Made by a program: the position numbers and the translations under genes
Assembly (NCBI RefSeq): GCF_006345805.1
Contig: NC_043011.1
Coordinates: 40,622,464 to 40,686,463 of the forward strand
DNA length: 64,000 nucleotides
Direction of reading: 5' to 3'
Source of the DNA: Octopus sinensis
Taxonomy: Eukaryota
Notes under the pieces: model-generated
What the model was told of the DNA's origin: nothing
Seen by the model: the letters and a program-made list of their open reading frames with translations, nothing else
Databases searched by the model: none
Shown here: in pieces, positions 1 through 62,170 of the stretch
Position numbering within the stretch: position 1 is the stretch's first letter
Layout: each line of letters opens with the position of its first letter

Positions 1-525
1 GTCTTTATGTTCTGAGTTCAAATTCCGCCGAGGTCGACTTTCCTATTCATCCTTTCGGGGTCGATTAAATAAGTACCAGTTACGCACTGGGATCGATATA
101 ATCGACTTAATCCGTTTGCCTGTCCTTGTTTGTCCTCTCTGTGTTTAGCCCCTTGTGGGTAGTAAAGAAATAGGTATTTCGTCTGTCTTTATGTTCTGAA
201 TTCAAATTCTGCCGAGGTCGACTTTGCCTTTCATCCTTTCGAAGTCGATTAAATAAGTACCAGTTACACACTGGGATCTATATAATCGACTTAATCCGTT
301 TGTCTGTCCTTGTTTGTCCTCTCTGTGTTTAGCCTCTTGTGGGTAGTAAAGAAATAGGTATTTCGTCTGTTTTTACGTTCTGAGTTCAAATTCTGCTAAG
401 GTGGACTTTGACTTTCATCCTTATTGGGTCGATAAATTAAGTATCAGTTGCGTACTGGTGTCGATCTAATCAACTCGCTCCCTTCCCCAAAATTTCGAGC
501 CTTGTGCCTAGAGTAGAAAAGAATA
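1..525 (+). repeat. Tandem array (~2.7 units, 184-bp period) of SINE family A bodies ending in the SINE tail; runs off the window start
   Basis: GTATTTCGTCTG recurs at 174 and 358. Each unit has B-box-like GAGTTCAAATTC and GGTCGACTTTGCCTTTCATCC. The tail CCCCAAAATTTCGAGCCTTGTGCCTAGAGTAGAAAAG is at ~484-520. Confidence 0.85.
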
Positions 526-2098: not shown

Positions 2099-2726
2099 AT
2101 ATAATATTAATTAGAGACAAAACCACTATTATGCAAATCAAACAAAGAAAGACTTAATCCAATACATAAAAAAATTTATATAAATTAAATATAATTAAGA
2201 TTAATTAAGATATCCACTACGATCGTTTCTTGTCACTTCAATGGACATTCATCAGGTGGTTTCAAGGCCTAAAATATAATCAATATTTTTACGATATAAA
2301 TTTGAAATGACTAATATATATAAAATATAAAATTATCAATGAAAATATATATAATAATCAAGAAGTAAAATAACCTCTATAAACGATTGTATATAATGAA
2401 ACCTAGTATTTAAATTCTCATATTTAAAGATGAAATAGCTAATTTCAAAAAACAAAAAACAAAAAATAAAAAATATATATATACACACTTGCTCATGCAC
2501 ATATATCCATGTATGTATATAAACATATCTAAATACATACACAAACTCACACACACATATATATATATCTATACATACACATAAATATATAGACAAAGAT
2601 AAATTTATAATGTAGCCGTATACTTTTACACATTACTTATTCATACTCCCCCACACACACATACAATCTCTCATTCATAAACAAATTCTCTCAGCATGAT
2701 AATAACACAGAGGTAATATAACATCT
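2099..2726 (-). repeat. Left arm of a ~625-bp inverted repeat (Penelope pseudo-LTR-like)
   Basis: Near-perfect reverse complement of 4411-5040; the ORF track gives the same 86-aa peptide from both arms. Confidence 0.85.
2214..2259 (-). ncRNA. Minimal type I hammerhead ribozyme motif
   Basis: Minus strand reads CCAC CUGAUGA A UGUC CAUUGAAGU GACA A GAAA CGAUCG UA GUGG: canonical core, stem I CCAC/GUGG, stem II UGUC/GACA, palindromic stem III ACGAUCGU. Confidence 0.85.
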
Positions 2727-2958
2727 AGTAGCCGCAGATACTCAACCACAAACTTATAGAAATATTTCATTCTTAGTAAAATATTAAATACTATATACTA
2801 TATATGTAATAACCATATATAAATACGTAAACAAACACACACACATATATATTCTATATACTAAATGCATTTAATAAACATATATAAATACGTAAACAAA
2901 CGCACACACACGTATATATTTATACATACAAAAATACATAAAGACAATATTTCTACAC

Positions 2959-4319
2959 ATAAGATGCACCAAGTGTAAGCTATGGACACATAAGAGATGC
3001 AGCAATGTCAAAGGAAGGCTAACTAGGAAGATGGTTTTTGTATGTGGCAGATGCTCAGGAACAATAAACACTGAAAATGCTCTGAGACCAACTTCCGTCA
3101 CTTTCCAGGGAGAAAAACTAGAAATAGTTGATAGTTTCCGTTACCTAGGTGACCAAGTCAGCAGCGGGGGTGGGTGTGCTGAAAGTGTAACTGCTAGAGT
3201 AAGAATAGCTTGGGCAAAGTTCAGAGAGCTCTTACCTCTGCTGGTGACAAAAGGCCTCTCGCACAGAGTGAAAGGCAGACTGTATGATGCGTGTGTACGA
3301 ACAGCCATGCTACATGGCAGTGAAACATGGGCCGTGACTGCTGAGGATATGCGTAAGCTCGCTAGAAATGAAGCCAGTATGCTCCGATGGATGTGTAATG
3401 CCGGTACTCACACTCGGCAGAGTGTAAGTACCTTGAGAGAAAAGCTGGACCTAAGAAGCATCAGTTGTGGTGTGCAAGAGAGACGTTTGCGCTGGTATGG
3501 TCATGTGGCGAGAATGGATGAAGATAGTTGTGTGAAAAAGTGCCACACCCTAGCGGTTGAGGGAACCTGTGGAAGAGGCAGACCCAGGAAAACCTGGGAC
3601 GAGGTGTGAAGCACGACCTTCGAACTTTAGGTCTCACTGAGGAAATGACTAGAGACCGAGACCTCTGGAAGTGTGCTGTGCGCGAGAAGACCCGGCAGGA
3701 CAAGTGAGTCCACAACCCGTGGCCTTCTACATGGGATGGAGCCAGCCTACGTATGCATACCTTCCCTTCTTGGGACACAAAACTCTACTTGTGAAGACGT
3801 GTTGAGGCAAGTGAGGATCAGAATCGAAATCGATCAATGGAAATTGCGGATGTGCTACCAGTGCCGGTGGCATGTCGAAACTCTGCTTGTGAAGACCCAT
3901 TGAGGCAAGTGAGGATCAGAATCGAAATCGATCAATGGAAATCGATCAATGGAAATTGCAGATGTGTTACCAGTGCCGGTGGCATGTAAGAGAACTTTCC
4001 GTTTCGCGACCGTTGCCAGCACCGCCCCGTTTCGTGTCCGTTGCCAGCCTCGCCTGGCCCTCGTGCCGTTGGCACATAAAAAGCACCATCCGTTCGTGGC
4101 CGTTTGCCAGCTCTGTCTGGCACCAGTGCGGGTGGCACGTAAAAAGCACCCACTACACTCACGGAGTGGTTGGTGTTAGGAAGGGCATCCAGCCGTAGAA
4201 ACACTGCCAGATTTGACTGGGCCTGATGAAGCCTTCTGGCTTCACAGACCCCAGTAGAACCGTCCAACCCATGCTAGCATGGAAAACGGACGCTAAATGA
4301 TGATGATGATGATGATGAT
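2959..4319 (+). mobile_element. 5'-truncated RTE-clade LINE (post-RT C-terminal ORF2 region, 3' UTR, (TGA)n tail)
   Basis: ORF 3031-3609 has RTE hallmarks: F.YLG, ARVRIAWAKFREL, GRLYDACVRTAMLHGSETW, RLRWYGHVARM, GRGRPRKTW. A CxxC..WxHxxC module lies upstream. It ends AACCCATGCTAGCATGGAAAACGGACGCTAAA(TGA)n. Confidence 0.9.
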
Positions 4320-4410
4320 TAATAATGCATAGTCACACACACACACATACAATCAATCATTCATACATAACCGTATTCACACTGCAAAATTCTAACACAG
4401 AGGAGGAACT

Positions 4411-5040
4411 GGATGTTATATTTCCTCTGTGTTATTATCATGCTGAGAGAATTTGTTTATGAATGAGAGATTGTATGTGTGTGTGGGGGAGTATGAATAT
4501 GTAATGTGTAGAAGTATACGGCTACATTATAAATTTATCTTTGTCTATATGTTTATGTATATGTATATATATATATATATATATGTGTGTGAGTTTGTGT
4601 ATGTATTTAGATATGTTTATATACATACATGGATATATGTGCATGAGCAAGTGTGTATATATATATTTTTTATTTTTTGTTTTTTGTTTTTTGAAATTAG
4701 CTATTTCATCTTTAAATATGAGAATTTAAATACTAGGTTTCATTATATACAATCGTTTATAGAGGTTATTTTACTTCTTGATTATTATATATATTTTCAT
4801 TGATAATTTTATATTTTATATATATTAGTCATTTCAAATTTATATCTTAAAAATATTGATTATATTTTAGGTCTTGAAACCACCTGATGAATGTCCATTG
4901 AAGTGACAAGAAACGATCGTAGTGGATATCTTAATTAATCTTAATTATATTTAATTTATATAAAATTTTTATGTATTGGATTAAGTCTTTCTTTGTTTGA
5001 TTTGCATAATAGTGGTTTTGTCTCTAATTAATATTATATT
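4411..5040 (+). repeat. Right arm of the ~625-bp inverted repeat
   Basis: Reverse complement of 2099-2726. Confidence 0.85.
4880..4925 (+). ncRNA. Minimal type I hammerhead ribozyme motif
   Basis: CCAC CTGATGA A TGTC CATTGAAGT GACA A GAAA CGATCG TA GTGG; predicted cleavage after 4921. Confidence 0.85.
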
Positions 5041-5836
5041 ATATTTTACTATAAAATTGGATTCAATCCTAAATCTGATTTTTCCCTGTAAATTTGGATT
5101 TATTCCCTAATATTTATTATTATATATATATATGTATATATATATATAGGGTATGTGTGTGTTGGATATTTATGTGTATATGCAATTGTGGCTACGTATG
5201 TGCAAGTGCACCTGTGTGCCCTGTACATGCGTCTGTGCAAGCAAAACTGTGTACGAATGGTGGACATGTGCGTGTGTGTATGAAGTGGACATGTATGTGC
5301 GCGTATGTGTGTGAGTGTGTGTGTGAGCGTGTGTGTATGTGTGTGTGTGTGTGTGCGCGCTTAGATTTTACAATTCAGAAAATCACACTAAAAGGATAGA
5401 TTACCACTAAAATTCATATTCTTTGTCGTCAGCATATTCATCGTCTCCCTCATCACCACTATCATCTTCATCTTTATCATCTTCATCGTCTTCGTCTTCT
5501 CCGGGGTCTTCACGAATTCGTCATCATATATATATATATATATATATAATTTCAACAATTGAGGGCAAAATTAATTAATTATTAATCAATTTCACCAAGT
5601 GTTCAGTATGCAAAGGGACCATTCAAGGCGAATTCAAATTATTACATTATATAGAAGGGCTTAGTAAAATAAATTACTTTGCCGCATACTGAACTCATTA
5701 GAAATAGCAGCTAAAAAACTTTTTTAAGGCTATTTCTAATACTTAAAGAAAATCTCTCTCATATATAGTGTTTGCTTAATTCAACTCACAAAAGTTTGGG
5801 GGTAAGGACATCGAAAAATCAAATGCTAAGGTTATT

Positions 5837-5888
5837 CGAGAACGTACGTTTCAAGATTAGTCAAAACAACATTTCTATCATCGGCTCA
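5837..5888 (-). ncRNA. Hammerhead motif, array unit 1
   Basis: Minus strand reads UGAG CCGAUGA U AGA AAU GUU GUUUU GAC UAA UCU U GAAA CGUACG UU CUCG. Core has U4C, stem III is the palindrome ACGUACGU, stem I is GAG/CUC plus a U-G pair. Confidence 0.75.
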
Positions 5889-6377
5889 GAAATTCCTTGG
5901 TTTGGATTTGGAAACACTGAAAATAAGAACATACCCTTTCGAAGATCTGCTCCCAACTAACAGTGCCAACAAATTCAAAATAAGCAAGCGAAGAATCTCT
6001 GTTCTCCCCTTTCCACCAGCGTGGGTAAAATCATCAACACTATGCTTATTTCGGTAAGATCCGAAGCATTAATCAGAGGGAGATTAATTATAATTTCAAC
6101 AATTGAGGGCAAAATTAATTAATTATTAATCAATTTCACAAGTGTTCAGTATGCAAAGGACCATTCAAGGCGAATTCAAATTATTACATTATATAGAGGG
6201 CTTAGTAAAATAAATTACTTTGCCGCATACTGAACTCATTAGAAATAGCAGCTAAAAAACTTTTTTAAGGCTATTTCTAATACTTAAAGAAAATCTCTCT
6301 CATATATAGTGTTTGCTTAATTCAACTCACAAAAGTTTGGGGGTAAGGACATCGAAAAATCAAATGCTAAGGTTATT

Positions 6378-6429
6378 CGAGAACGTACGTTTCAAGATTA
6401 GTCAAAACAACATTTCTATCATCGGCTCA
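6378..6429 (-). ncRNA. Hammerhead motif, array unit 2
   Basis: Same sequence as unit 1. Confidence 0.75.
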
Positions 6430-6922
6430 GAAATTCCTTGGTTTGGATTTGGAAACACTGAAAATAAGAACATACCTTTCGAAGATCTGCTCCCAACTAA
6501 CAGTGCCAACAAATTCAAAATAAGCAAGCGAAGAATCTCTGTTCTCCCCTTTCCACCAGCGTGGGTTAAAATCATCAACACTATGCTTATTTCGGTAAGA
6601 TCCGAAGCATTAATCAGAGGGAGATTAATTATAATTTCAACAATTGAGGGCAAAATTAATTAATTATTAATCAATTTCACCAAGTGTTCAGTATGCAAGG
6701 GACCACCATCAAGGCGAATTCAAATTATTACATTATATAGAAGGGCTTAGTAAAATAAATTACTTTGCCGCATACTGAACTCATTAGAAATAGCAGCTAA
6801 AAAACTTTTTTAAGGCTATTTCTAATACTTAAAGAAAATCTCTCTCATATATATTGTTTGCTTAATTCAACTCACAAAAGTTTGGGGGTAAGGACATCGA
6901 AAAATCAAATGCTAAGGTTATT

Positions 6923-6974
6923 CGAGAACGTACGTTTCAAGATTAGTCAAAACAACATTTCTATCATCGGCTCA
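6923..6974 (-). ncRNA. Hammerhead motif, array unit 3
   Basis: Same sequence as unit 1. Confidence 0.75.
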
Positions 6975-7465
6975 GAAATTCCTTGGTTTGGATTTGGAAA
7001 CACTGAAAATAAGAACATACCCTTCGAAGATCTGCTCCAACTAACAGTGCCAACAAATTCAAAATAAGCAAGCGAAGAATCTCTGTTCTCCCCTTCCACC
7101 AGCGTGGGTTAAAATCATCAAACACTATGCTTATTTCGGTAAGATCCGAAGCATTAATCAGAGGGAGATTAATTATAATTTCAACAATTGAGGGCAAAAT
7201 TAATTAATTATTAATCAATTTCACCAAGTGTTCAGTATGCAAAGGGACCATTCAAGGCGAATTCAAATTATTACATTATATAGAAGGGCTTAGTAAAATA
7301 AATTACTTTGCCGCATACTGAACTCATTAGAAATAGCAGCTAAAAAACTTTTTTAAGGCTATTTCTAATACTTAAAGAAAATCTCTCTCATATATAGTGT
7401 TTGCTTAATTCAACTCACAAAAGTTTGGGGGTAAGGACATCGAAAAATCAAATGCTAAGGTTATT

Positions 7466-7517
7466 CGAGAACGTACGTTTCAAGATTAGTCAAAACAACA
7501 TTTCTATCATCGGCTCA
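7466..7517 (-). ncRNA. Hammerhead motif, array unit 4
   Basis: Same sequence as unit 1. Confidence 0.75.
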
Positions 7518-8012
7518 GAAATTCCTTGGTTTGGATTTGGAAACACTGAAAATAAGAACATACCTTTCGAAGATCTGCTCCAACTAACAGTGCCAACAAA
7601 TTCAAAATAAGCAAGCGAAGAATCTCTGTTCTCCCCTTTCCACCAGCGTGGGTTAAAATCATCAAACACTATGCTTATTTCGGTAAGATCCGAAGCATTA
7701 ATCAGAGGGAGATTAATTATAATTTCAACAATTGAGGGCAAAATTAATTAATTATTAATCAATTTCACCAAGTGTTCAGTATGCAAAGGGACCATTCAAG
7801 GCGAATTCAAATTATTACATTATATAGAAGGGCTTAGTAAAATAAATTACTTTGCCGCATACTGAACTCATTAGAAATAGCAGCTAAAAAAAAACTTTTT
7901 TAAGGCTATTTCTAATACTTAAAGAAAATCTCTCTCATATATAGTGTTTGCTTAATTCAACTCACAAAAGTTTGGGGGTAAGGACATCGAAAAATCAAAT
8001 GCTAAGGTTATT

Positions 8013-8064
8013 CGAGAACGTACGTTTCAAGATTAGTCAAAACAACATTTCTATCATCGGCTCA
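8013..8064 (-). ncRNA. Hammerhead motif, array unit 5
   Basis: Same sequence as unit 1. Confidence 0.75.
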
Positions 8065-8556
8065 GAAATTCCTTGGTTGGATTTGGAAACACTGAAAATA
8101 AGAACATACCCTTTCGAAGATCTGCTCCCAACTAACAGTGCCAACAAATTCAAAATAAGCAAGCGAAGAATCTCTGTTCTCCCCTTTCCACCAGCGTGGG
8201 TTAAAATCATCAACACTATGCTTATTTCGGTAAGATCCGAAGCATTAATCAGAGGGAGATTAATTATAATTTCAACAATTGAGGGCAAAATTAATTAATT
8301 ATTAATCAATTTCACCAAGTGTTCAGTATGCAAAGGGACCATTCAAGGCGAATTCAAATTATTACATTATATAGAAGGGCTTAGTAAAATAAATTACTTT
8401 GCCGCATACTGAACTCATTAGAAATAGCAGCTAAAAAACTTTTTTAAGGCTATTTCTAATACTTAAAGAAAATCTCTCTCATATATAGTGTTTGCTTAAT
8501 TCAACTCACAAAAGTTTGGGGGTAAGGACATCGAAAAATCAAATGCTAAGGTTATT

Positions 8557-8608
8557 CGAGAACGTACGTTTCAAGATTAGTCAAAACAACATTTCTATCA
8601 TCGGCTCA
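8557..8608 (-). ncRNA. Hammerhead motif, array unit 6
   Basis: Same sequence as unit 1. Confidence 0.75.
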
Positions 8609-9101
8609 GAAATTCCTTGGTTTGGATTTGGAAACACTGAAAATAAGAACATACCCTTTCGAAGATCTGCTCCCAACTAACAGTGCCAACAAATTCAAAA
8701 TAAGCAAGCGAAGAATCTCTGTTCTCCCCTTTCCACCAGCGTGGGTTAAAATCATCAACACTATGCTTATTTCGGTAAGATCCGAAGCATTAATCAGAGG
8801 GAGATTAATTATAATTTCAACAATTGAGGGCAAAATTAATTAATTATTAATCAATTTCACCAAGTGTTCAGTATGCAAAGGGACCATTCAAGGCGAATTC
8901 AAATTATTACATTATATAGAAGGGCTTAGTAAAATAAATTACTTTGCCGCATACTGAACTCATTAGAAATAGCAGCTAAAAAACTTTTTTAAGGCTATTT
9001 CTAATACTTAAAGAAAATCTCTCTCATATATAGTGTTTGCTTAATTCAACTCACAAAAGTTTGGGGGTAAGGACATCGAAAAATCAAATGCTAAGGTTAT
9101 T

Positions 9102-9153
9102 CGAGAACGTACGTTTCAAGATTAGTCAAAACAACATTTCTATCATCGGCTCA
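9102..9153 (-). ncRNA. Hammerhead motif, array unit 7
   Basis: Same sequence as unit 1. Confidence 0.75.
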
Positions 9154-9647
9154 GAAATTCCTTGGTTTGGATTTGGAAACACTGAAAATAAGAACATACC
9201 CTTTCGAAGATCTGCTCCCAACTAACAGTGCCAACAAATTCAAAATAAGCAAGCGAAGAATCTCTGTTCTCCCCTTTCCACCAGCGTGGGTTAAAATCAT
9301 CAAACACTATGCTTATTTCGGTAAGATCCGAAGCATTAATCAGAGGGAGATTAATTATAATTTCAACAATTGAGGGCAAAATTAATTAATTATTAATCAA
9401 TTTCACCAAGTGTTCAGTATGCAAAGGGACCATTCAAGGCGAATTCAAATTATTACATTATATAGAAGGGCTTAGTAAAATAAATTACTTTGCCGCATAC
9501 TGAACTCATTAGAAATAGCAGCTAAAAAACTTTTTTAAGGCTATTTCTAATACTTAAAGAAAATCTCTCTCATATATAGTGTTTGCTTAATTCAACTCAC
9601 AAAAGTTTGGGGGTAAGGACATCGAAAAATCAAATGCTAAGGTTATT

Positions 9648-9699
9648 CGAGAACGTACGTTTCAAGATTAGTCAAAACAACATTTCTATCATCGGCTCA
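9648..9699 (-). ncRNA. Hammerhead motif, array unit 8
   Basis: Same sequence as unit 1. Confidence 0.75.
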
Positions 9700-10192
9700 G
9701 AAATTCCTTGGTTTGGATTTGGAAACACTGAAAATAAGAACATACCCTTTCGAAGATCTGCTCCCAACTAACAGTGCCAACAAATTCAAAATAAGCAAGC
9801 GAAGAATCTCTGTTCTCCCCTTCCACCAGCGTGGGTTAAAATCATCAAACACTATGCTTATTTCGGTAAGATCCGAAGCATTAATCAGAGGGAGATTAAT
9901 TATAATTTCAACAATTGAGGGCAAAATTAATTAATTATTAATCAATTTCACCAAGTGTTCAGTATGCAAAGGGACCATTCAAGGCGAATTCAAATTATTA
10001 CATTATATAGAAGGGCTTAGTAAAATAAATTACTTTGCCGCATACTGAACTCATTAGAAATAGCAGCTAAAAAACTTTTTTAAGGCTATTTCTAATACTT
10101 AAAGAAAATCTCTCTCATATATAGTGTTTGCTTAATTCAACTCACAAAAGTTTGGGGGTAAGGACATCGAAAAATCAAATGCTAAGGTTATT

Positions 10193-10244
10193 CGAGAACG
10201 TACGTTTCAAGATTAGTCAAAACAACATTTCTATCATCGGCTCA
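10193..10244 (-). ncRNA. Hammerhead motif, array unit 9
   Basis: Same sequence as unit 1. Confidence 0.75.
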
Positions 10245-10464
10245 GAAATTCCTTGGTTTGGATTTGGAAACACTGAAAATAAGAACATACCCTTTCGAAG
10301 ATCTGCTCCCAACTAACAGTGCCAACAAATTCAAAATAAGCAAGCGAAGAATCTCTGTTCTCCCCTTTCCACCAGCGTGGGTTAAAATCATCAAACACTA
10401 TATATATATATATAACGTAAGGAACACACGTCTGAAAATCAGCAACAGTCCGAGGGGTAGGAAG

Positions 10465-10765
10465 ATGAGGAAAAACTTTCTGGAAAGTCCAAGGTGGGGA
10501 GGAAGGACTTCTTGGTAAAGTCCGAGGTGGGAGGACTTCCGGTAAAAGACAGATGAGGGGGAGTGGAGGAAGGAATGGAAGGACTTTCTGAAAACTCCGA
10601 AGAGAGGATGGAGGGGAAAATTCCTGGAAAGTTCCGAAGAGGGGTGGAAGGTGATGAGGGGGAATTCCGAGGACTTCCTGGAAAGTTCCCAAGAGAAGAG
10701 GTGAAGCGGTTGTGAGAGATTTCCTGCAAAGTTCCCAAGAGCGGGGACTTCCCCGGAAGTTCAGA
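10465..10765. repeat. Degenerate purine-rich minisatellite built on GGACTTCCTGGAAAGTTCC
   Basis: About 7 variants of (GGACTT)YCTGGAAAGTTCCRAAGAG at ~35-50 bp spacing. Confidence 0.65.
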
Positions 10766-11182
10766 GGACGAGAGACCACGGAGAAGACGAGGAAGATGAG
10801 GAAGAGAAGGGTGATAGTGGTGATAGTGGGCATGAGGGAGACGACGAAGAATATGAATTTTAGTGGTATTCTATCCTTTCAGTGTGATTTTCTCAATTGT
10901 AAAATCAAAGAACGCACACACATCCACGTACACGTATGCACTCCCACACACACAGACACACACTGACATGCACACTTGCTTACAAGCTTGCTTTTGTATG
11001 TATATATATATATATATATATATATACAAATATATACGCACATTCACACACATAAATATATATATATATATATACAGATATACGTATATTTATACACATA
11101 TTACATACATATATATATATATATATATATACACATACATATATACACACTGATATACATACATACATACACACATATATAT

Positions 11183-11218
<36 letters not shown>

Positions 11219-11706: not shown

Positions 11707-11930
11707 GGCAGAAACGTTAGCACGCCGGGCGAAATTCTTAGCCGTATTTCGTCTGCCGCTACGTTCTGAGTTCAAATTCCGCCGAGGTCGACTTTGCCTT
11801 TCATCCTTTCGGGGTCGATTAAATAATTACCAGTTACGCACTGGGGTCGATATAATCGACTTAATCCCTTTGTCTGTCCTTGTTTGTCCTCTCTGTGTTT
11901 AGCCCCTTGTGGGTAGTAAAGAAATAGGTA
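11707..11930 (+). mobile_element. SINE family A (tRNA-like head, one body)
   Basis: GGCAGAAACGTTAG (A-box-like), then GAGTTCAAATTCCGCC (B-box-like), then the same body as 1-525. Confidence 0.85.
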
Positions 11931-15036: not shown

Positions 15037-15555
15037 CCGTAGTGTGTCAACAACATTTATTTCCGGTGTCATATGAAATTGTACCTGTTATTTATGACAT
15101 ATTTCATATAAGCTACGTTCGTATGAATAAAAGGTTATCGTTATTAAACTTTTATTAATAAACACATATTCTAAGTTCACAACATATGCAGTTTTAATTT
15201 TCCTCTCTGTTGCACAGATACACATATTACATATATACTCGTTTAAGAAACAGATTGGGTTTATTTACATTTCTGAAGAAAAAAGATACCCTTCCCCCAC
15301 CCCTAACCCTAACCTAAACCCTAACCTAACCCTATCCCTAACCCTAACCCTAACCCAACCCCTAGCCCTAACTCTAACCCTAACCCTAAAACTAGGGCCA
15401 TAATTATGGGCGGACACTAAAGAGGGAACGGTTTTGTTATCCAGCTCTGTTTACGAGTGACCCCTCAGTTTATGGCCACAGGGTATCTTTTTTCTCATAA
15501 ATAACAGGGACAATTTCATATGACACCGGAAATAAATGTTGTTGACACACTACGG
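15037..15555. mobile_element. Non-autonomous element with ~60-bp terminal inverted repeats and an internal (CCCTAA)n tract
   Basis: 15037-15097 is mirrored by 15495-15555. Inner IR AAAAAAGATACCC/GGGTATCTTTTTT. Telomere-type repeats at 15299-15390. Confidence 0.7.
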
Positions 15556-21195: not shown

Positions 21196-21229
<34 letters not shown>

Positions 21230-21239
<10 letters not shown>

Positions 21240-21672
21240 TGTATTTATATGTATGCATATATGTATATATATATATGTGCATGCATATATATATATATAT
21301 ATGTGCATGCATATATATATGTATATATATATATATACATATGTATATATATATATACATATGTATATATATATATATATATATATACATACAAACATGC
21401 TCATACAAACATACAAGCGTACACACTTTCATACTCAGACACATACGCTACACATAATTCTTACCTTCACATTTCTTTTCTTACATTTTCTGTATAATAG
21501 TTTTCTTTCTTTGTATTATATAGATATAGTTATGTTCACTCATGTTGTTTTATATTTTATTTTTATATATTCATTATTCACGGCATACAATTGAACTAAA
21601 AAATACAGTAAACGATTGCCAGATCTGATATTCGCAGTCAATATTCCTACACACACACATATGTATATATGT

Positions 21673-21717
<45 letters not shown>

Positions 21718-22149
21718 ATATATATCAGTGTATTTATATGTATGCATATAGTATATATATATATGTGCATGCATATATATATATATATATGTGCATGCAT
21801 ATATATATGTATATATATATATATACATATGTATATATATATATACATATGTATATATACATATATATATATGTATGCTCATACAACATACAAGCGTACA
21901 CACTTTCATACTCAGACACATACGCTACACATAATTCTTACCTTCACATTTCTTTTCTTACATTTTCTGTATAATAGTTTTCTTTCTTTGTATTATATAG
22001 ATATAGTTATGTTCACTCATGTTGTTTTATATTTTATTTTTATATATTCATTATTCACGGCATACAATTGAACTAAAAAATACAGTAAACGATTGCCAGA
22101 TCTGATATTCGCAGTCAATATTCCTACACACACACATATGTATATATGT

Positions 22150-22194
<45 letters not shown>

Positions 22195-22195
22195 A
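21230..22195. repeat. Tandem duplication, period ~478 bp
   Basis: Unique segments recur at 21411/21889 and 21616/22093. Confidence 0.85.
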
Positions 22196-22371
22196 TATAC
22201 ATACAAAATACATATATACATACGAAAGTACATAGATCCACAGACACACTTACTCAAATGCACACCACATATATGCACAGATATATATAGAAAAACGACA
22301 GAGAGAATGTAGGTTATTTGTAACCATACATAAACACACATACACACATACATACACACACACACACACAC

Positions 22372-22402
<31 letters not shown>

Positions 22403-29425: not shown

Positions 29426-30292
29426 ATGTTCATGCTATTAAATAGCATGAACATGAAAATAAAGTTTACTCTAGAACACCTCGACATCACTGGATCGCTA
29501 TCACTACTTGACTTCAAACTGAATATAACGGAAGAAAGGGAGATTCACACTGAGTTCTACAAGAAAGCAGCCAGTAGAGATATGTTTGTCCAGTACAATT
29601 CATCACTTCCACTCGGTGCCAAAACAGGATACGCCAGAAATGAACTTGCACGCATTCAGGGTAAGTGTAGGAGAACGGAGGACAGGGTAACCACCCTACA
29701 CGATTTTCTAGATATGTTGAAAACCAACGGGTACCCTAGATCCATTGTAAATCGGATTAAGTACCCAAGACGACCAACACGTCAAACACATAGAATACCC
29801 AGCAACACATGCTTCCTTAAAATACCCCATTTTAGCAAGAGGATAACTACATCCATCCGAAGAGCCATAAGAAGAGAAGGGCTAGACATACAACTAGCCC
29901 ACTCCGGCCCCTCTCTGAGAGGACACCTCACTAAGAAACGAACAAGGGACAACAGTCAATGTACCCTAGCAAACTGTCCCATCCGTGACACAGATTTATG
30001 CCAACGGGTTAATGTCGTGTATAGAATACAATGTAACAGATGCAACAAGTTCTATGTGGGTAGCACAACAAGACCATTACACGTCCGCATCAAAGAACAT
30101 CTGAACACGAAAGCTTCCTCCTTCAGAAAACATCTAGAGAGATGCCGGAACACCGACAAAAGCATAACAGTCACAAATGAGGCCAATGAAATAAATTTGG
30201 GTAATTTAAGAATTAAGGAAGCTATATTCATACACAGACTAGGGCCCCAAATTAACAACAGGCTGGAGGTTGGTAATCAATACATTATTTAG
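29426..30292 (+). mobile_element. 5'-truncated Penelope-like element ORF: RT thumb plus GIY-YIG endonuclease
   Basis: IKFTLE..SLSLLD..HTEFYKK, LKTNGYP, NVVYRIQCNRCNKFYVGSTTRPLHVRIKEH and LRIKEAIFI..PQIN; 288 aa without stops. Confidence 0.92.
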
Positions 30293-30709
30293 ATACATCT
30301 GGATGCGTGTAGGTTCATTTTTGATAATATGCTCATCTGTAGTTTATAACCAAAAAAAAAGAAGAAAAGAAAAAAAGAAGCAAAAAAGGAAGCTGCACGT
30401 ATAATACGTAACTTAGAATCAGCGCTACGGATGTATCAGCACACGCGAGATTGAGACATAGCTGACCTAACACACATCTCATGAGGAATTCCGGAAGGAG
30501 CATCGTGAAACCACAGCTGAGACGCTTCCACAAAATAAAAAAGAAAAGCTGTTAGAAAACCGATTATAGCAGCGACTCCATCTAAGAATATCTGCAGAAG
30601 GAATATTATTCCGAAATGTCATACCAGACTATGGATGACTAAATTACAACAGGTATATAGCCCTTGTCTGTATTATAGTGCATTGTTGTACCATTCATAA
30701 CATTTTATT

Positions 30710-30795
<86 letters not shown>

Positions 30796-31068
30796 TTATA
30801 GAAGGAGCTTCTACAGGACTAGAACTGTTTCATTCAGATGAAATCTTCAGGAAGCTGGCTGTCAAAATAAGTTCTGGTATTTATGCATTTAAGCAGATTT
30901 AATGGAGTGGTGGTGGCAGGGGGGACGTTTTTTGGGTAGGTTGGTATTTAGGAGATAAACAGGGGGCACAAGCTATTGTTCTTAGGGGAGTGGTCAAAGG
31001 CCAGAGTGTTTTTGAATCAGTGAGAAAATATATATATATATATATGTATGAATGTATTATAATTATTC

Positions 31069-31831: not shown

Positions 31832-31931
31832 NNNNNNNNNNNNNNNNNNNNNNNNNNNNNNNNNNNNNNNNNNNNNNNNNNNNNNNNNNNNNNNNNNNNN
31901 NNNNNNNNNNNNNNNNNNNNNNNNNNNNNNN
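31832..31931. other. Assembly gap (100 N)
   Basis: Run of N. Confidence 1.
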
Positions 31932-47667: not shown

Positions 47668-48070
47668 TAAGGCGGTGAGCTGGCAGAAACGTTAGCACGC
47701 CGGGCGAAATGCGTAGCCGTATTTCGTCTGCCGTTACGTTCTGAGTTCAAATTCCGCCGAGGTCGACTTTGCCTTTTATCCTTTCGGGGTCGATTAAATA
47801 AGTACCAGTTACCCACTGGGGTCGATTATAATCGACTTAAACCGTCTGTCTGTTCTTGTTTGTCCCCTCTGTGTTTATCCCCTTGTGGGTGGTAAAGAAA
47901 TAGGTATTTCGTATGTTGCTACATTCTGAGTTCAAATTCCACCGAGGTCGACTTTGCCTTTCTTCTTTTCGAGGTCGATAAATGAAGTAATAGTTGCGTA
48001 CATAGGTCGATCTAATCGACTGGTCCCCTCCCCCAAAATTTTGGGCCTTGTGCCTACAGTAGAAAAGAAT
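47668..48070 (+). mobile_element. SINE family A: head, two tandem bodies and tail
   Basis: TAAGGCGGTGAGCTGGCAGAAACG.., two GAGTTCAAATTCC motifs, then the tail CCCCAAAATTTTGGGCCTTGTGCC. Confidence 0.85.
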
Positions 48071-55993: not shown

Positions 55994-57085
55994 TATTTCT
56001 TTATTGACCACAAGGGGCTAAAAATAGAGGGGACAAACAAGGACAGACAAAGGGATTAAGTCGATTACATCGACCTCATTGCGTAACTGTTACTCAATTT
56101 ATCAACCCCGAAAGGATGAAAGGCAAAGTCGACCTCGGCGGAATTTGAACTCAAAACGTAACGGCAGACGAAATACCTATTTCTTTACTAGCCACACGGG
56201 GCTAAACACAGAGAGGACAAACAAGGATAGACAGACTGATTAAGTCGATTATATCGACCCCAGTGCGTAACTGGTACTCAATTTATCAACCCCGAAAGGA
56301 TGAAAGGCAAAGTCGACCTCGGCGGAATTTGAACTCAGAACGTAGCGGCAGACGAAATACCTATTTCTTTACTACCCACACGGGGATAAACACAGAGAGG
56401 ACAAACAAGGGCAGACAGACTGATTAAGTCGATTATATCGAACCCAGCGCGTAACTGGTACACATTTAATCGACCCCGAAAGGATGAAAGGCAAAGTCGA
56501 TCTCGGCGGAATTTGAACTCAAAACGTAACGGCAGACGAAATACCTATTTCTTTACTACCCACACGGGGCTAAACACAGAGAGGACAAACAAGGACAGAC
56601 AGACTGATTAAGTCAATTATATCGACCCCAGTGCGTAACTGGTACTCAATTTATCAACCCCTAAAGGATGAAAAGCAAAGTCGACCTCGGCGGAATTTGA
56701 ACTCAGAACGTAACGGCAGACGAAATACCTATTTCATTACTACCCACACGGGGCTAAAAATAGAGGGGACAAACAAGGACAGACAGACTGATTAAGTTGA
56801 TTATATCGACTCCAGTGCGTAACTGGTACTTATTTAATCGACACCGAAAGGATGGAAGGTTAAGTCGATCTCGGTGGAATTTGAACTCAGAACGTAGCGG
56901 CAGACGAAATACCTATTTCTTTACTACCCACAGAGAAGACAAACAAGGACAGACAGACGGATTAAGTTGATTATATCGACTCCTGTGCGTAACTGGTACT
57001 TATTTAATCGACACCGAAAGTGTGAAAGGCTAAGTCGACCTCGGCGGAATTTGAACTCAGTACGTTTCTGCCAGCTCGCCACCTT
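55994..57085 (-). repeat. Tandem array of SINE family A bodies (184-bp period, ~5.8 units) with one shortened head
   Basis: Unit starts at 55994, 56178, 56362, 56546, 56730 and 56914; head remnant at 57060-57085. Confidence 0.9.
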
Positions 57086-61365: not shown

Positions 61366-61929
61366 ATACTGTGAATTTTCCAGTTAGCGTTCAGTGCTTC
61401 CTTAAACGTCCGACTCTGTCCTTTCTCACTGCTTCTCTCACTCACTTTCTCCCACTCCCTCTCACTCTCTTGTGTCTCTTTCTCTCACTCTTTTTCTCTC
61501 TCTCTCTTTCTTTCTCTGGTTCTGTTCTACAGACGTAATTGAAATCGGTGTGCAAGTAATTGCTTACGTTGCTCACAACACTCTAAATCGACATCGACAC
61601 GACAGTAACACTTGAGCTGAGATTTTTCTTCGATTAATCCAACATCAGCACGAAATATTATAATAAACAACGATATTGTGCCAACACGTGCACGTGAATC
61701 GCGATTTTTTTTTTCTTCAGTCAAGCATTTCGACTTCCTGACATTTAGAAAACGGCTGATTTGGAAAAGTGAGCGAGGCTGCAGTTCAATCTTCTTGCTC
61801 TTGATACTTGTTTTCATTTAATTAGTAAGATTTGTCATTTATTTAGGTGATAGTTTTAATGGTGTTATTTGACCAAAGGTCAGTCAGAATACAGAACACC
61901 AGTGTTTAATACATACATACATACATACA

Positions 61930-61965
<36 letters not shown>

Positions 61966-61968
61966 TAT

Positions 61969-62170
61969 ATATTGCCCACAAGGGACTAAACATAGAGGGG
62001 ACAAACAAGGACAGACAAAGGGATTAAGTCGATTACATCGACCCCAGAGCGTAACTGGTACTTTATTTACCGACTTCGAAAGGATGAAAGGCAAAGTCGA
62101 CCTCAGCGGAATTTGAACTCAGAACGTAACGGCAGACGAAAAACGGCTACGCGTTTCGCCCGGCGTGCTA
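61969..62170 (-). mobile_element. SINE family A
   Basis: Reverse complement of 11707-11930. Confidence 0.8.

What the first reader, a model, noticed from the sequence alone, without database searches (positions are those of the whole stretch)
5545..10401. Nine-copy ~545-bp tandem array with a hammerhead ribozyme motif in every unit (candidate retrozyme / circRNA system)
Seen: about 8.9 head-to-tail units. The minus strand of each reads GAG-CCGAUGA-[U AGA AAU GUU GUUUU GAC UAA UCU U]-GAAA-CGUACG-UU-CUC. This gives stem I GAG/CUC, a core with U4C, a stem II with an internal loop, and the perfect palindrome ACGUACGU as stem III. Established: minimal type I hammerheads with palindromic stem III occur in Penelope-like pLTRs and in non-LTR retrozymes (newt satellite 2, schistosome Sm-alpha, cricket pDo500), where they cleave as dimers in tandem transcripts. 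Inference: a minus-strand transcript would cut after GUU (between 5841 and 5840, and at the equivalent site in each unit). That would release 541-547-nt monomers that could circularise and be mobilised in trans by a Penelope RT. I do not know of this family being described, but I cannot search.
Basis: partly seen in the sequence, partly recalled or inferred. Interest (0 to 1): 0.92.

Follow-up and report, generated by a model that had tools for sequence, protein, structure and literature searches.

The report
Octopus tandem repeat with weak hammerhead motif
A real nine-copy, 545-bp tandem repeat in an octopus genome carries a degraded-looking hammerhead ribozyme motif in each copy and sits inside a (TA)n microsatellite, so it is most likely a new but unremarkable member of the known "retrozyme" class of ribozyme-bearing mobile repeats; whether the ribozyme cuts is unproven.

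Summary
The array runs 5545-10401 and holds 8.9 units of 541-547 bp. The 50-nt minus-strand motif is identical in all nine units, with the predicted cut between 5841 and 5840. The units are about 99.8% identical, so the nine-fold recurrence says nothing about selection.

The motif is a poor hammerhead. It has C4 instead of U4, a U10.1·U11.1 mismatch, a GUU triplet, a helix II worth -0.5 kcal/mol and a 3-bp helix I. Its predicted folds are not the hammerhead. Rfam finds nothing, but Rfam also misses exact-core minimal hammerheads in the same window.

Several things favour a real hammerhead origin:
- Chance expectation is about 0.001 per unit and 0.02-0.3 per window.
- Octopus DNA holds exact-core hammerheads of the same design (8-nt palindromic helix III, homo-mismatch at the base of helix II).
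- Both array ends abut (TA)n (p≈0.003), the target that Penelope-like elements use, including a copy in this window.
- The unit is non-coding, AT-rich and strongly self-paired.

No relatives could be retrieved, so covariation, copy number and expression are untested.

Verdict: a probable non-LTR retrozyme or Penelope-dependent tandem element, a new member of a known kind, with activity uncertain. Interest is moderate.

The parts
5545..10401 (-). Tandem array: 8.9 head-to-tail units of 541-547 bp (34% G+C, no ORF of note). Units are about 99.8% identical. The boundary unit lacks about 45 nt.
10194..10243 (-). Hammerhead-like motif, copy 1: GAG|CCGAUGA|U-AGA-AAU-GUU-GUUUU-GAC-UAA-UCU-U|GAAA|CGUACG|UU^CUC. 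Predicted cut between 10197 and 10196.
9649..9698 (-). Hammerhead-like motif, copy 2 (identical)
9103..9152 (-). Hammerhead-like motif, copy 3 (identical)
8558..8607 (-). Hammerhead-like motif, copy 4 (identical)
8014..8063 (-). Hammerhead-like motif, copy 5 (identical)
7467..7516 (-). Hammerhead-like motif, copy 6 (identical)
6924..6973 (-). Hammerhead-like motif, copy 7 (identical)
6379..6428 (-). Hammerhead-like motif, copy 8 (identical)
5838..5887 (-). Hammerhead-like motif, copy 9 (identical). Predicted cut between 5841 and 5840.
5526..5547 (.). (AT)11 microsatellite abutting the left end of the array; the junction shares TAT with the unit
10399..10414 (.). (TA)8 microsatellite abutting the right end of the array; the junction shares TAT with the unit
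5300..5510 (-). Left arm of a flanking inverted repeat (unknown repeat 'X', 5'-truncated, reading outward, ending in a (CA)n tail). About 82% identical to the right arm.
10415..10775 (+). About 360 nt of degenerate 32-nt repeats between (TA)8 and the right arm. Probably the upstream part of the longer right-hand copy of 'X'.
10775..10963 (+). Right arm of the flanking inverted repeat ('X', reading outward, (CA)n tail)

Best explanation
The array is a Penelope-dependent, non-autonomous tandem retroelement of the non-LTR retrozyme kind, in an octopus genome.

Shown:
- A 545-bp non-coding, AT-rich unit with strong internal pairing is present as a young 8.9-mer.
- Its truncated ends lie inside a (TA)n microsatellite.
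- Each unit carries, on the minus strand, a type I hammerhead layout of the design seen elsewhere in octopus DNA.

Inferred:
- A minus-strand multimeric transcript is cut after GUU by two neighbouring motifs. These pair through the palindrome ACGUACGU to form a double hammerhead.
- The roughly 545-nt monomer is circularised by a host tRNA ligase.
- A Penelope-like reverse transcriptase/GIY-YIG endonuclease that nicks (TA)n copies the circle or multimer more than once around. This yields a multimer of identical units in the microsatellite.
- Because all nine units carry C4, the template RNA carried it too. If this route was used, the C4 ribozyme must retain some activity in vivo. That activity is expected to be low.
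For: 1. The motif is unlikely by chance. It is expected 0.0008 times per unit and 0.02-0.1 times per window. An independent covariance model gives E≈0.3 for 128 kb searched, which is about 0.005 when restricted to the roughly 2.4 kb of long-period tandem units.

2. Exact-core hammerheads of the same design occur far above expectation in about 100 kb of octopus DNA. The design is a homo-mismatch at 10.1/11.1, a 3-4 bp helix II and an A-CNNNNG-U palindrome. Examples are window 4878-4927(+) and 2212-2261(-), and O. bimaculoides L004 ~2128-2178(-). Window 30806-30856(-) also has U·U at the base of helix II.

3. Each deviation has an active natural precedent. U4C in a viroid and U10.1·U11.1 are reported in PMC3088659. 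Axolotl HHR_Amex2 has U·U and works as a dimer (PMC7229834).

4. Both array ends abut (TA)≥6 runs, with a chance of 0.0026. PLEs prefer (TA)n (PMC8557442). The PLE copy in this window ends exactly at (TA)39, and its O. bimaculoides relative is bounded by TA runs.

5. The unit fits the class. It is 34% G+C with no coding capacity. The circular MFE has z=-4.3 on the minus strand against -3.1 on the plus strand. The size falls within the 51-972 bp range reported for retrozyme families (bioRxiv 10.64898/2026.07.22.740005).

6. Near-identity of the units and the truncated ends fit insertion of a preformed multimer.
Against: - Core position 4 is C. Helix II alone is -0.5 kcal/mol (z=+0.3). The 67-nt region folds into a different hairpin (-8.0, z=+0.4).
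- The double-hammerhead conformation is -13.4 against a dimer MFE of -22.8 kcal/mol. An extended quasi-palindrome, UUGAAACGUACGUU(C)UCGA, sequesters the GAAA box and the 3' strand of helix I.
- GUU is not among the usual natural triplets (PMC1636495).
- There is no Rfam hit at E≤10. This is weak evidence, because exact-core minimal hammerheads are missed too.
- The unit shows no homology to the PLE or to anything else in the window or in 83 kb of fetched loci.
- No second locus, transcript or relative was found. Mobility, copy number and covariation are therefore untested.
- U4C also appears as plain decay in a PLE copy. L002 has CCGACGA where its homologue L003 keeps U4.
Confidence: 0.55

Rival explanations
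1. The motif is a hammerhead-derived relic. The unit descends from a hammerhead-bearing Penelope-related element, but this lineage's ribozyme is dead (C4, U·U, GUU, eroded helix II). The array grew or was homogenised at the DNA level, by unequal crossing-over or re-insertion of rolling-circle eccDNA, after an initial insertion into (TA)n.
For: - The motif accumulates several sub-optimal features, and its predicted folds are non-hammerhead.
- Single core mutations, including U4C, are seen in decayed PLE 3'UTR hammerheads: window CUGcAGA, L001 CUGAAaA, L002 CcGACGA and L003 CUGACcA.
- Unit identity of 99.8% is equally expected from recent unequal exchange.
Against: - A nine-unit array this homogeneous, with truncated ends in (TA)n, is most simply a one-step multimer insertion.
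- U4C and U·U each retain activity in natural ribozymes.
Confidence: 0.25
2. The array is an ordinary satellite-like tandem repeat and the hammerhead resemblance is coincidental. The 8-nt palindrome is part of a longer DNA quasi-palindrome in a unit rich in inverted repeats.
For: - The window-wide covariance-model E≈0.3 ties with three other weak hits, at least one of them clearly spurious.
- The unit contains many inverted repeats.
- The palindrome extends to UUGAAACGUACGUU(C)UCGA.
- There is no Rfam hit.
Against: - The expectation is only about 0.001 per unit.
- The design is shared with exact-core octopus hammerheads.
- Placement in (TA)n has p≈0.003. Placement in (TA)n argues for insertion, not in-situ duplication. 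The unit junctions carry no (TA)n, which excludes microsatellite-mediated duplication.
Confidence: 0.15
3. The array is the internal tandem-repeat region of a DNA transposon or foldback-type element whose ends are the ~190-bp inverted repeats at 5300-5510 and 10775-10963.
For: An inverted repeat of 82% identity flanks the array.
Against: - The arms lie at unequal distances from the array (about 20 nt against about 375 nt).
- They end outward in (CA)n tails, like two head-to-head retroposon 3' ends.
- They are far more diverged (18%) than the array units (0.2%).
- The (TA)n runs lie inside the arms, directly against the array, rather than outside as a target duplication would.
- No other copy of the arms occurs in the window.
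Confidence: 0.05

Closest known systems
Metazoan non-LTR retrozymes (Cervera & de la Peña 2020, PMC7229834; Li et al. 2026 bioRxiv 10.64898/2026.07.22.740005), e.g. Mytilus 350-390-bp repeats and the axolotl Rtz_331/353 families
   Same: Head-to-tail repeats with one type I hammerhead layout per unit; low G+C; no ORF, LTR, PBS or PPT; a predicted highly paired RNA; coexistence with Penelope-like elements. U·U at the base of helix II and dependence on dimers, as in axolotl HHR_Amex2. The unit length lies within the 51-972 bp range.
   Different: The core has C4 instead of U4, so the published canonical and minimal descriptors would not report it. Helix II is much weaker and the triplet is GUU. 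The unit is longer than the 170-400 nt reported for invertebrates. No expression, circularity, cleavage or multi-locus data exist. The class is not reported in cephalopods in the literature searched.
Minimal hammerheads of Penelope-like element pLTRs (Cervera & de la Peña 2014, PMC4209133)
   Same: Short helix I, palindromic positions 15.2-16.2/loop 3 that imply a double hammerhead, an unpaired nucleotide after A9, low expected activity, and association with (TA)n-targeting PLEs.
   Different: PLE min-HHRs have a conserved G10.1-C11.1 and a long 6-8 bp helix II. Here 10.1/11.1 is U·U and helix II is 3 bp + internal loop + 3 bp. The unit has no sequence similarity to the PLE in the window, whose own 3'UTR hammerhead has a different design (GGAAU/AUUCC helix II, AUAU/AUGU helix III).
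Satellite hammerheads acting as dimers: newt satellite 2, Schistosoma Sm-alpha, cave-cricket pDo500
   Same: A tandem genomic repeat in which a weak or palindromic helix III forces two adjacent motifs to cooperate.
   Different: Those have canonical cores and conserved loop 1-loop 2 contacts, and transcripts and cleavage have been demonstrated. None of that is shown here.
Natural core variants of the hammerhead (Perreault et al. 2011, PMC3088659; the viroid U4C variant of Ambrós & Flores 1998 as cited there)
   Same: C at position 4 and a U10.1·U11.1 mismatch each occur in ribozymes that still work.
   Different: Those variants carry one deviation in an otherwise strong ribozyme with tertiary contacts. 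This motif combines both deviations with GUU and marginal helices.

Membership tests
Hammerhead ribozyme (type I) | Conserved box C3-U4-G5-A6-N7-G8-A9 | tested here: not met
   The box reads CCGAUGA in all nine units (U4C). A natural U4C variant retains in vivo function (PMC3088659).
Hammerhead ribozyme (type I) | G12-A13-A14, the A15.1-U16.1 pair and H17 (not G) at the cleavage site | tested here: met
   GAAA-CGUACG-U-U^C. U17 is allowed by the NUH rule (general knowledge) but is unusual among natural triplets.
Hammerhead ribozyme (type I) | Three helices around the core, with helix II starting at a G10.1-C11.1 pair | tested here: inconclusive
   Helix I is 3 bp (+3 after a bulge). Helix III is an 8-nt palindrome that pairs only in a dimer. 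Helix II starts with U·U, then 3 bp, a 3x3 loop and 3 bp, worth -0.5 kcal/mol (z=+0.3). The hammerhead fold scores +0.6 kcal/mol against an MFE of -8.0. U·U has natural precedent.
Hammerhead ribozyme (type I) | Covariation supporting the helices across relatives | not testable with these tools
   The units are near-identical. No relatives were retrieved.
Hammerhead ribozyme (type I) | Match to curated or independent covariance models | tested here: inconclusive
   There is no Rfam hit at E≤10, but exact-core min-HHRs in the window are also missed. Model R1, built from two other octopus hammerheads, gives 15.7 bits and E≈0.3 window-wide.
Hammerhead ribozyme (type I) | Site-specific self-cleavage | not testable with these tools
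   Requires transcription assays.
Non-LTR retrozyme | At least 2 consecutive tandem units, each with a complete type I hammerhead | tested here: inconclusive
   There are nine units with the motif. The motif fails a strict canonical or minimal descriptor at position 4.
Non-LTR retrozyme | Small non-coding unit, G+C below 50%, no LTR/PBS/PPT | tested here: met
   545 bp and 33.8% G+C. Only short ORFs that differ between units, with no protein relatives. The size lies within 51-972 bp but above the 170-400 nt.
Non-LTR retrozyme | Predicted highly self-paired circular RNA | tested here: met
   The circular MFE is -134 kcal/mol with 64% of bases paired and z=-4.3 on the minus strand (plus strand z=-3.1).
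Non-LTR retrozyme | Coexistence with autonomous Penelope-like elements in the genome | tested here: met
   A GIY-YIG ORF lies at 29426-30292. It is 80% identical at the protein level and 88% at the DNA level to O. bimaculoides PLE copies.
Non-LTR retrozyme | Multiple dispersed genomic loci (mobility); insertion signature | tested here: inconclusive
   No second locus was found in the window or in 83 kb of loci, and the genome cannot be searched. The insertion signature is present: both ends lie in (TA)n, p≈0.003.
Non-LTR retrozyme | Expression as linear and circular monomer RNAs | not testable with these tools
   No transcript data are available.
PLE pLTR min-HHR | Extra nucleotide after A9, conserved G10.1-C11.1, a 6-8 bp helix II, palindromic 15.2-16.2 | tested here: not met
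   The palindrome is present, but G10.1-C11.1 and the long helix II are absent. The window's own PLE 3'UTR motif does show these features.

The most novel reading that the evidence does not exclude
This is a recently active cephalopod retrozyme whose hammerhead works in vivo as an obligate dimer despite a C4 / U10.1·U11.1 / GUU core. It produces circular RNAs of about 545 nt, larger than any reported for invertebrate retrozymes. A Penelope-like enzyme re-inserts them as multimers into (TA)n microsatellites.
Probability: 0.3. Interest if true: 0.6.

Novelty: new member of a known kind. Interest (0 to 1): 0.4.

Why it matters
If confirmed, this would extend retrozymes to cephalopods. It would also give a natural genomic example of a hammerhead that tolerates C4 together with a U·U helix II base, which is useful for defining how relaxed search descriptors must be.

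The clean (TA)n-bounded multimer is a rare, readable insertion footprint. It links tandem hammerhead repeats to the target preference of Penelope-like endonucleases, a link so far argued mainly from co-occurrence and pLTR similarity.

If the ribozyme is dead, the locus is simply one more young satellite derived from a mobile element.

Tried and rejected
- Rfam gave no hammerhead at gathering score on the whole window, nor at E≤10 on the array. I do not treat this as evidence against, because the exact-core motif at 4878-4927 and the one at 30806-30856 are also missed.
- TRF cannot see a 545-bp period.
- The unit has no homology to the rest of the window, to the PLE, or to four fetched loci.
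- Two DNA pattern scans of JGI metagenome contigs gave 0 hits.
- Three protein searches used unit ORFs: the 116-aa plus-strand ORF, then a concatenate of the longer ORFs of both strands. Neither gave a hit. The third search identified the host as an octopus through the PLE ORF.
- No octopus or cephalopod retrozyme or hammerhead paper turned up.
- No tRNA-like part was found, and no ORF of note.
- I rejected a Helitron reading. The ends lack the 5'-TC/CTRR-3' termini (general knowledge, read).
- I rejected microsatellite-mediated in-situ duplication. The unit junctions contain 45 nt of unit sequence and no (TA)n.
- A three-sequence MAFFT alignment for the covariance model was misaligned and discarded. 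The two-sequence one was used instead.

Full report
**1. Observation.**

The repeat finder reports nine copies spaced 541-548 bp; TRF missed them because its period limit is 500. The string GAGCCGATGA…GAAACGTACGTTCTC occurs nine times, only on the minus strand. Cutting after GUU gives units of 545, 546, 545, 544, 547, 543, 545 and 541 nt, and the last cut falls between 5841 and 5840.

The array runs from 5545 to 10401, which is 8.9 units. The boundary unit lacks about 45 nt.

Among the eight full units, only 19 of 550 alignment columns vary. Most are homopolymer-length differences, and there are about 8 substitutions in 4360 nt. The motif's presence 'in every unit' is therefore a single observation and not evidence of constraint.

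**2. Quality of the hammerhead reading.**

Read as a type I hammerhead, the motif has these features:
- C3-**C4**-G5-A6-U7-G8-A9.
- A U10.1·U11.1 mismatch.
- A helix II of 3 bp, a 3x3 internal loop and 3 bp (one of them a G·U).
- G12-A13-A14.
- A helix III that is the palindrome A-CGUACG-U.
- U17.
- A helix I of GAG/CUC, plus 3 bp beyond a bulged U.

Thermodynamically it is poor:
- Helix II alone is -0.5 kcal/mol (z=+0.3).
- The 67-nt region prefers a different hairpin (-8.0 kcal/mol, z=+0.4).
- The drawn monomer hammerhead evaluates to +0.6 kcal/mol.
- The double-hammerhead evaluates to -13.4 against -22.8 for the dimer MFE. The palindrome extends to UUGAAACGUACGUU(C)UCGA and swallows the GAAA box and the 3' strand of helix I.
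- For comparison, an exact-core motif elsewhere in the window is only 4.6 kcal/mol from its dimer MFE.

Rfam reports nothing, even at E≤10. That negative is uninformative, because Rfam also misses the exact-core minimal hammerheads at 4878-4927 and 30806-30856.

The literature softens two of the defects. A U4C viroid variant has reduced activity in vitro but suffices in vivo. U10.1·U11.1 occurs in active natural hammerheads and is the best-tolerated mismatch (PMC3088659). Axolotl HHR_Amex2 has the same U·U and cleaves efficiently only as a dimer (PMC7229834). GUU is not among the usual natural triplets GUC, GUA and AUA (PMC1636495).

**3. Is it more than chance?**

It allowed at most 1 mismatch in CUGANGA, exact GAAA, an 8-nt perfect palindrome, H17, at least 3 bp of helix I and an unconstrained helix II. 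This descriptor is expected 0.0008 times per unit (both strands) and 0.02-0.1 times per 64-kb window.

As an independent test I built a covariance model from two other octopus hammerheads, not from the candidate. It scores the candidate at 15.7 bits, E≈0.3 for the whole window, level with three other weak hits. Restricted to the roughly 2.4 kb of long-period tandem units in the window, that is about 0.005.

Exact-core motifs of this design are hugely enriched in octopus DNA:
- One family lies in both arms of an inverted repeat in the window: CCAC|CUGAUGA|A-UGUC…GACA-A|GAAA|CGAUCG|UA^GUGG.
- One lies in O. bimaculoides locus L004: CGUACG|CUGACGA|A-GGGU-AAAU-ACCC-A|GAAA|CUCGAG|UC^CGUGCG.
- The Markov expectation for exact-core motifs is about 0.01 in that amount of sequence.

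These motifs share two features with the candidate: a same-base mismatch flanking a short helix II, and the A-CNNNNG-U palindrome. A one-mismatch copy is therefore much more likely to be a variant or decayed true hammerhead than noise.

Decay does happen, however. Four PLE 3'UTR hammerheads each carry a different single core mutation, and one of them is U4C.

**4. Context.**

The host is an octopus. The GIY-YIG ORF at 29426-30292 (Pfam PF01541) is 80% identical to an O. bimaculoides protein. The surrounding 1.27 kb is 88% identical to two O. bimaculoides loci.

That 5'-truncated Penelope-like element ends exactly where a (TA)39 begins. Its O. bimaculoides relative is bounded by TA runs, with a ~35-nt tail. 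A second, minus-strand hammerhead ends 15 nt from the other side of the same (TA)39. This agrees with the reported (TA)n preference of several PLE clades (PMC8557442).

The 545-bp array is bounded by (AT)11 on the left and (TA)8 on the right, with TAT shared at both junctions. (TA)≥6 runs, with a 3-bp margin, cover 4.7% of the window, and both ends abut such runs by chance in 0.26% of random placements.

The junctions between units contain unit sequence, not (TA)n. This rules out microsatellite-mediated duplication in place. It points to insertion of a preformed multimer, or of about 2 units that later expanded.

Outside the microsatellite lie two outward-reading copies of an unknown repeat, 82% identical to each other and ending in (CA)n. 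They are at 5300-5510 and 10775-10963, and the right-hand copy extends inward through 32-nt repeats to the (TA)8. This looks like an older head-to-head pair around the (TA)n rather than the ends of a transposon carrying the array.

**5. The unit itself.**

The unit is 33.8% G+C. It has only short ORFs that differ between units, and these have no protein relatives. It has no tRNA-like part.

It is rich in inverted repeats. The circular MFE is -134 kcal/mol on the minus strand (z=-4.3, 64% paired) against -110 (z=-3.1) on the plus strand. This fits the 'highly self-paired' retrozyme RNAs and mildly favours the minus strand as the RNA strand.

The unit length exceeds the 170-400 nt given for invertebrate retrozymes. 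It lies within the 51-972 bp range of the 2026 survey, where most families have at most 7 units.

**6. Mechanism and verdict.**

The most likely explanation (0.55) is a Penelope-dependent non-autonomous tandem retroelement of the retrozyme kind:
- Minus-strand multimers are cut by double hammerheads formed through the palindrome.
- The monomers are ligated into circles.
- They are copied more than once around and inserted at a nicked (TA)n.

Only the anatomy, the insertion footprint and the motif's non-random nature are shown. Transcription, cleavage, circularisation and reverse transcription are inferred. Because C4 is in all units, the template carried it. The route requires a C4 ribozyme with residual activity.

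The rivals are:
- A hammerhead-derived but dead relic that expanded at the DNA level (0.25).
- A plain satellite with a coincidental motif (0.15).
- The internal repeats of an element bounded by the flanking inverted repeats (0.05).

**7. What could not be done.**

No eukaryotic genome collection could be searched by DNA. Two metagenome scans and the ORF-based protein searches found no relative. Copy number, empty sites, covariation and expression therefore remain open. No paper on cephalopod retrozymes or hammerheads was found in the held library.

**8. Novelty.**

If real, this is a new member of a known kind, with a slightly unusual core.

Noticed in passing
window 2099-2729 and 4408-5039; motifs at 2212-2261 (-) and 4878-4927 (+): The arms of a ~0.6-0.9-kb inverted repeat (97% identical) each carry an exact-core minimal hammerhead: CCAC|CUGAUGA|AUGUCCAUUGAAGUGACAA|GAAA|CGAUCG|UA^GUGG. 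A LINE-type RT fragment (ORF 3031-3609) lies between the arms. The left arm ends at a (TA)7 run. Rfam does not detect the motif.
   Followed up: partly
window 30806-30856 (-): An exact-core type I hammerhead with a stable monomeric helix III: AGCUUC|CUGAAGA|UUUCAUCUGAAU|GAAA|CAGUUCUAGUCCUG|UA^GAAGCU. Its 3' side ends 15 nt from (TA)39, tail-to-tail with the Penelope-like element on the other side. It may be the 3' end of another element running into the N gap at 31832-31931.
   Followed up: partly
window 29443-30713 (+); decayed hammerhead ~30586-30640: A 5'-truncated Penelope-like element (GIY-YIG ORF 29426-30292), 88% identical to O. bimaculoides copies. Its 3' end abuts (TA)39 at 30713-30790. 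Its 3'UTR has a PLE-type min-HHR with one core mutation (CUGcAGA); the O. bimaculoides copy L001 has a different one (CUGAAaA).
   Followed up: yes
L004 ~2128-2178 (-) (O. bimaculoides CM046620.1): A well-formed exact-core min-HHR of the same design as the candidate (6-bp helix I, A·A-flanked 4-bp helix II, ACUCGAGU palindrome). It sits among TA-rich microsatellites and assembly gaps.
   Followed up: partly
L002 ~11125-11180 (+) and L003 ~11143-11200 (+) (ENA ERZ21867824, a distant organism): Homologous PLE 3'UTR hammerheads, each with a different single core mutation (CCGACGA = U4C; CUGACCA), an AUUAAU helix III and U17. This shows that U4C arises as ordinary decay in PLE copies.
   Followed up: no
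window 5300-5510 (-) and 10775-10963 (+): An inverted pair (82% identical) of an unknown repeat flanks the array. Each copy has an acidic-codon-like stretch, a conserved ~60-nt block and a (CA)n tail. No other copy occurs in the window or in the fetched loci.
   Followed up: partly
window 1-475 and 55994-57065; also ~11707-11924, 47671-47900, 61909-62170: 184-bp SINE-like units occur both dispersed and as head-to-tail arrays (2.6 and 5.9 copies, about 90% identical). They are 84-90% identical to O. bimaculoides L001 8918-9099. ARAGORN finds no tRNA.
   Followed up: no
window 15301-15389: An interstitial run of 15 CCCTAA telomere-type repeats.
   Followed up: no
window 21196-22372: A 477-bp-period tandem duplication (2.1 copies, 83-96% identical) made largely of TA/CA microsatellite-like sequence.
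   Followed up: no
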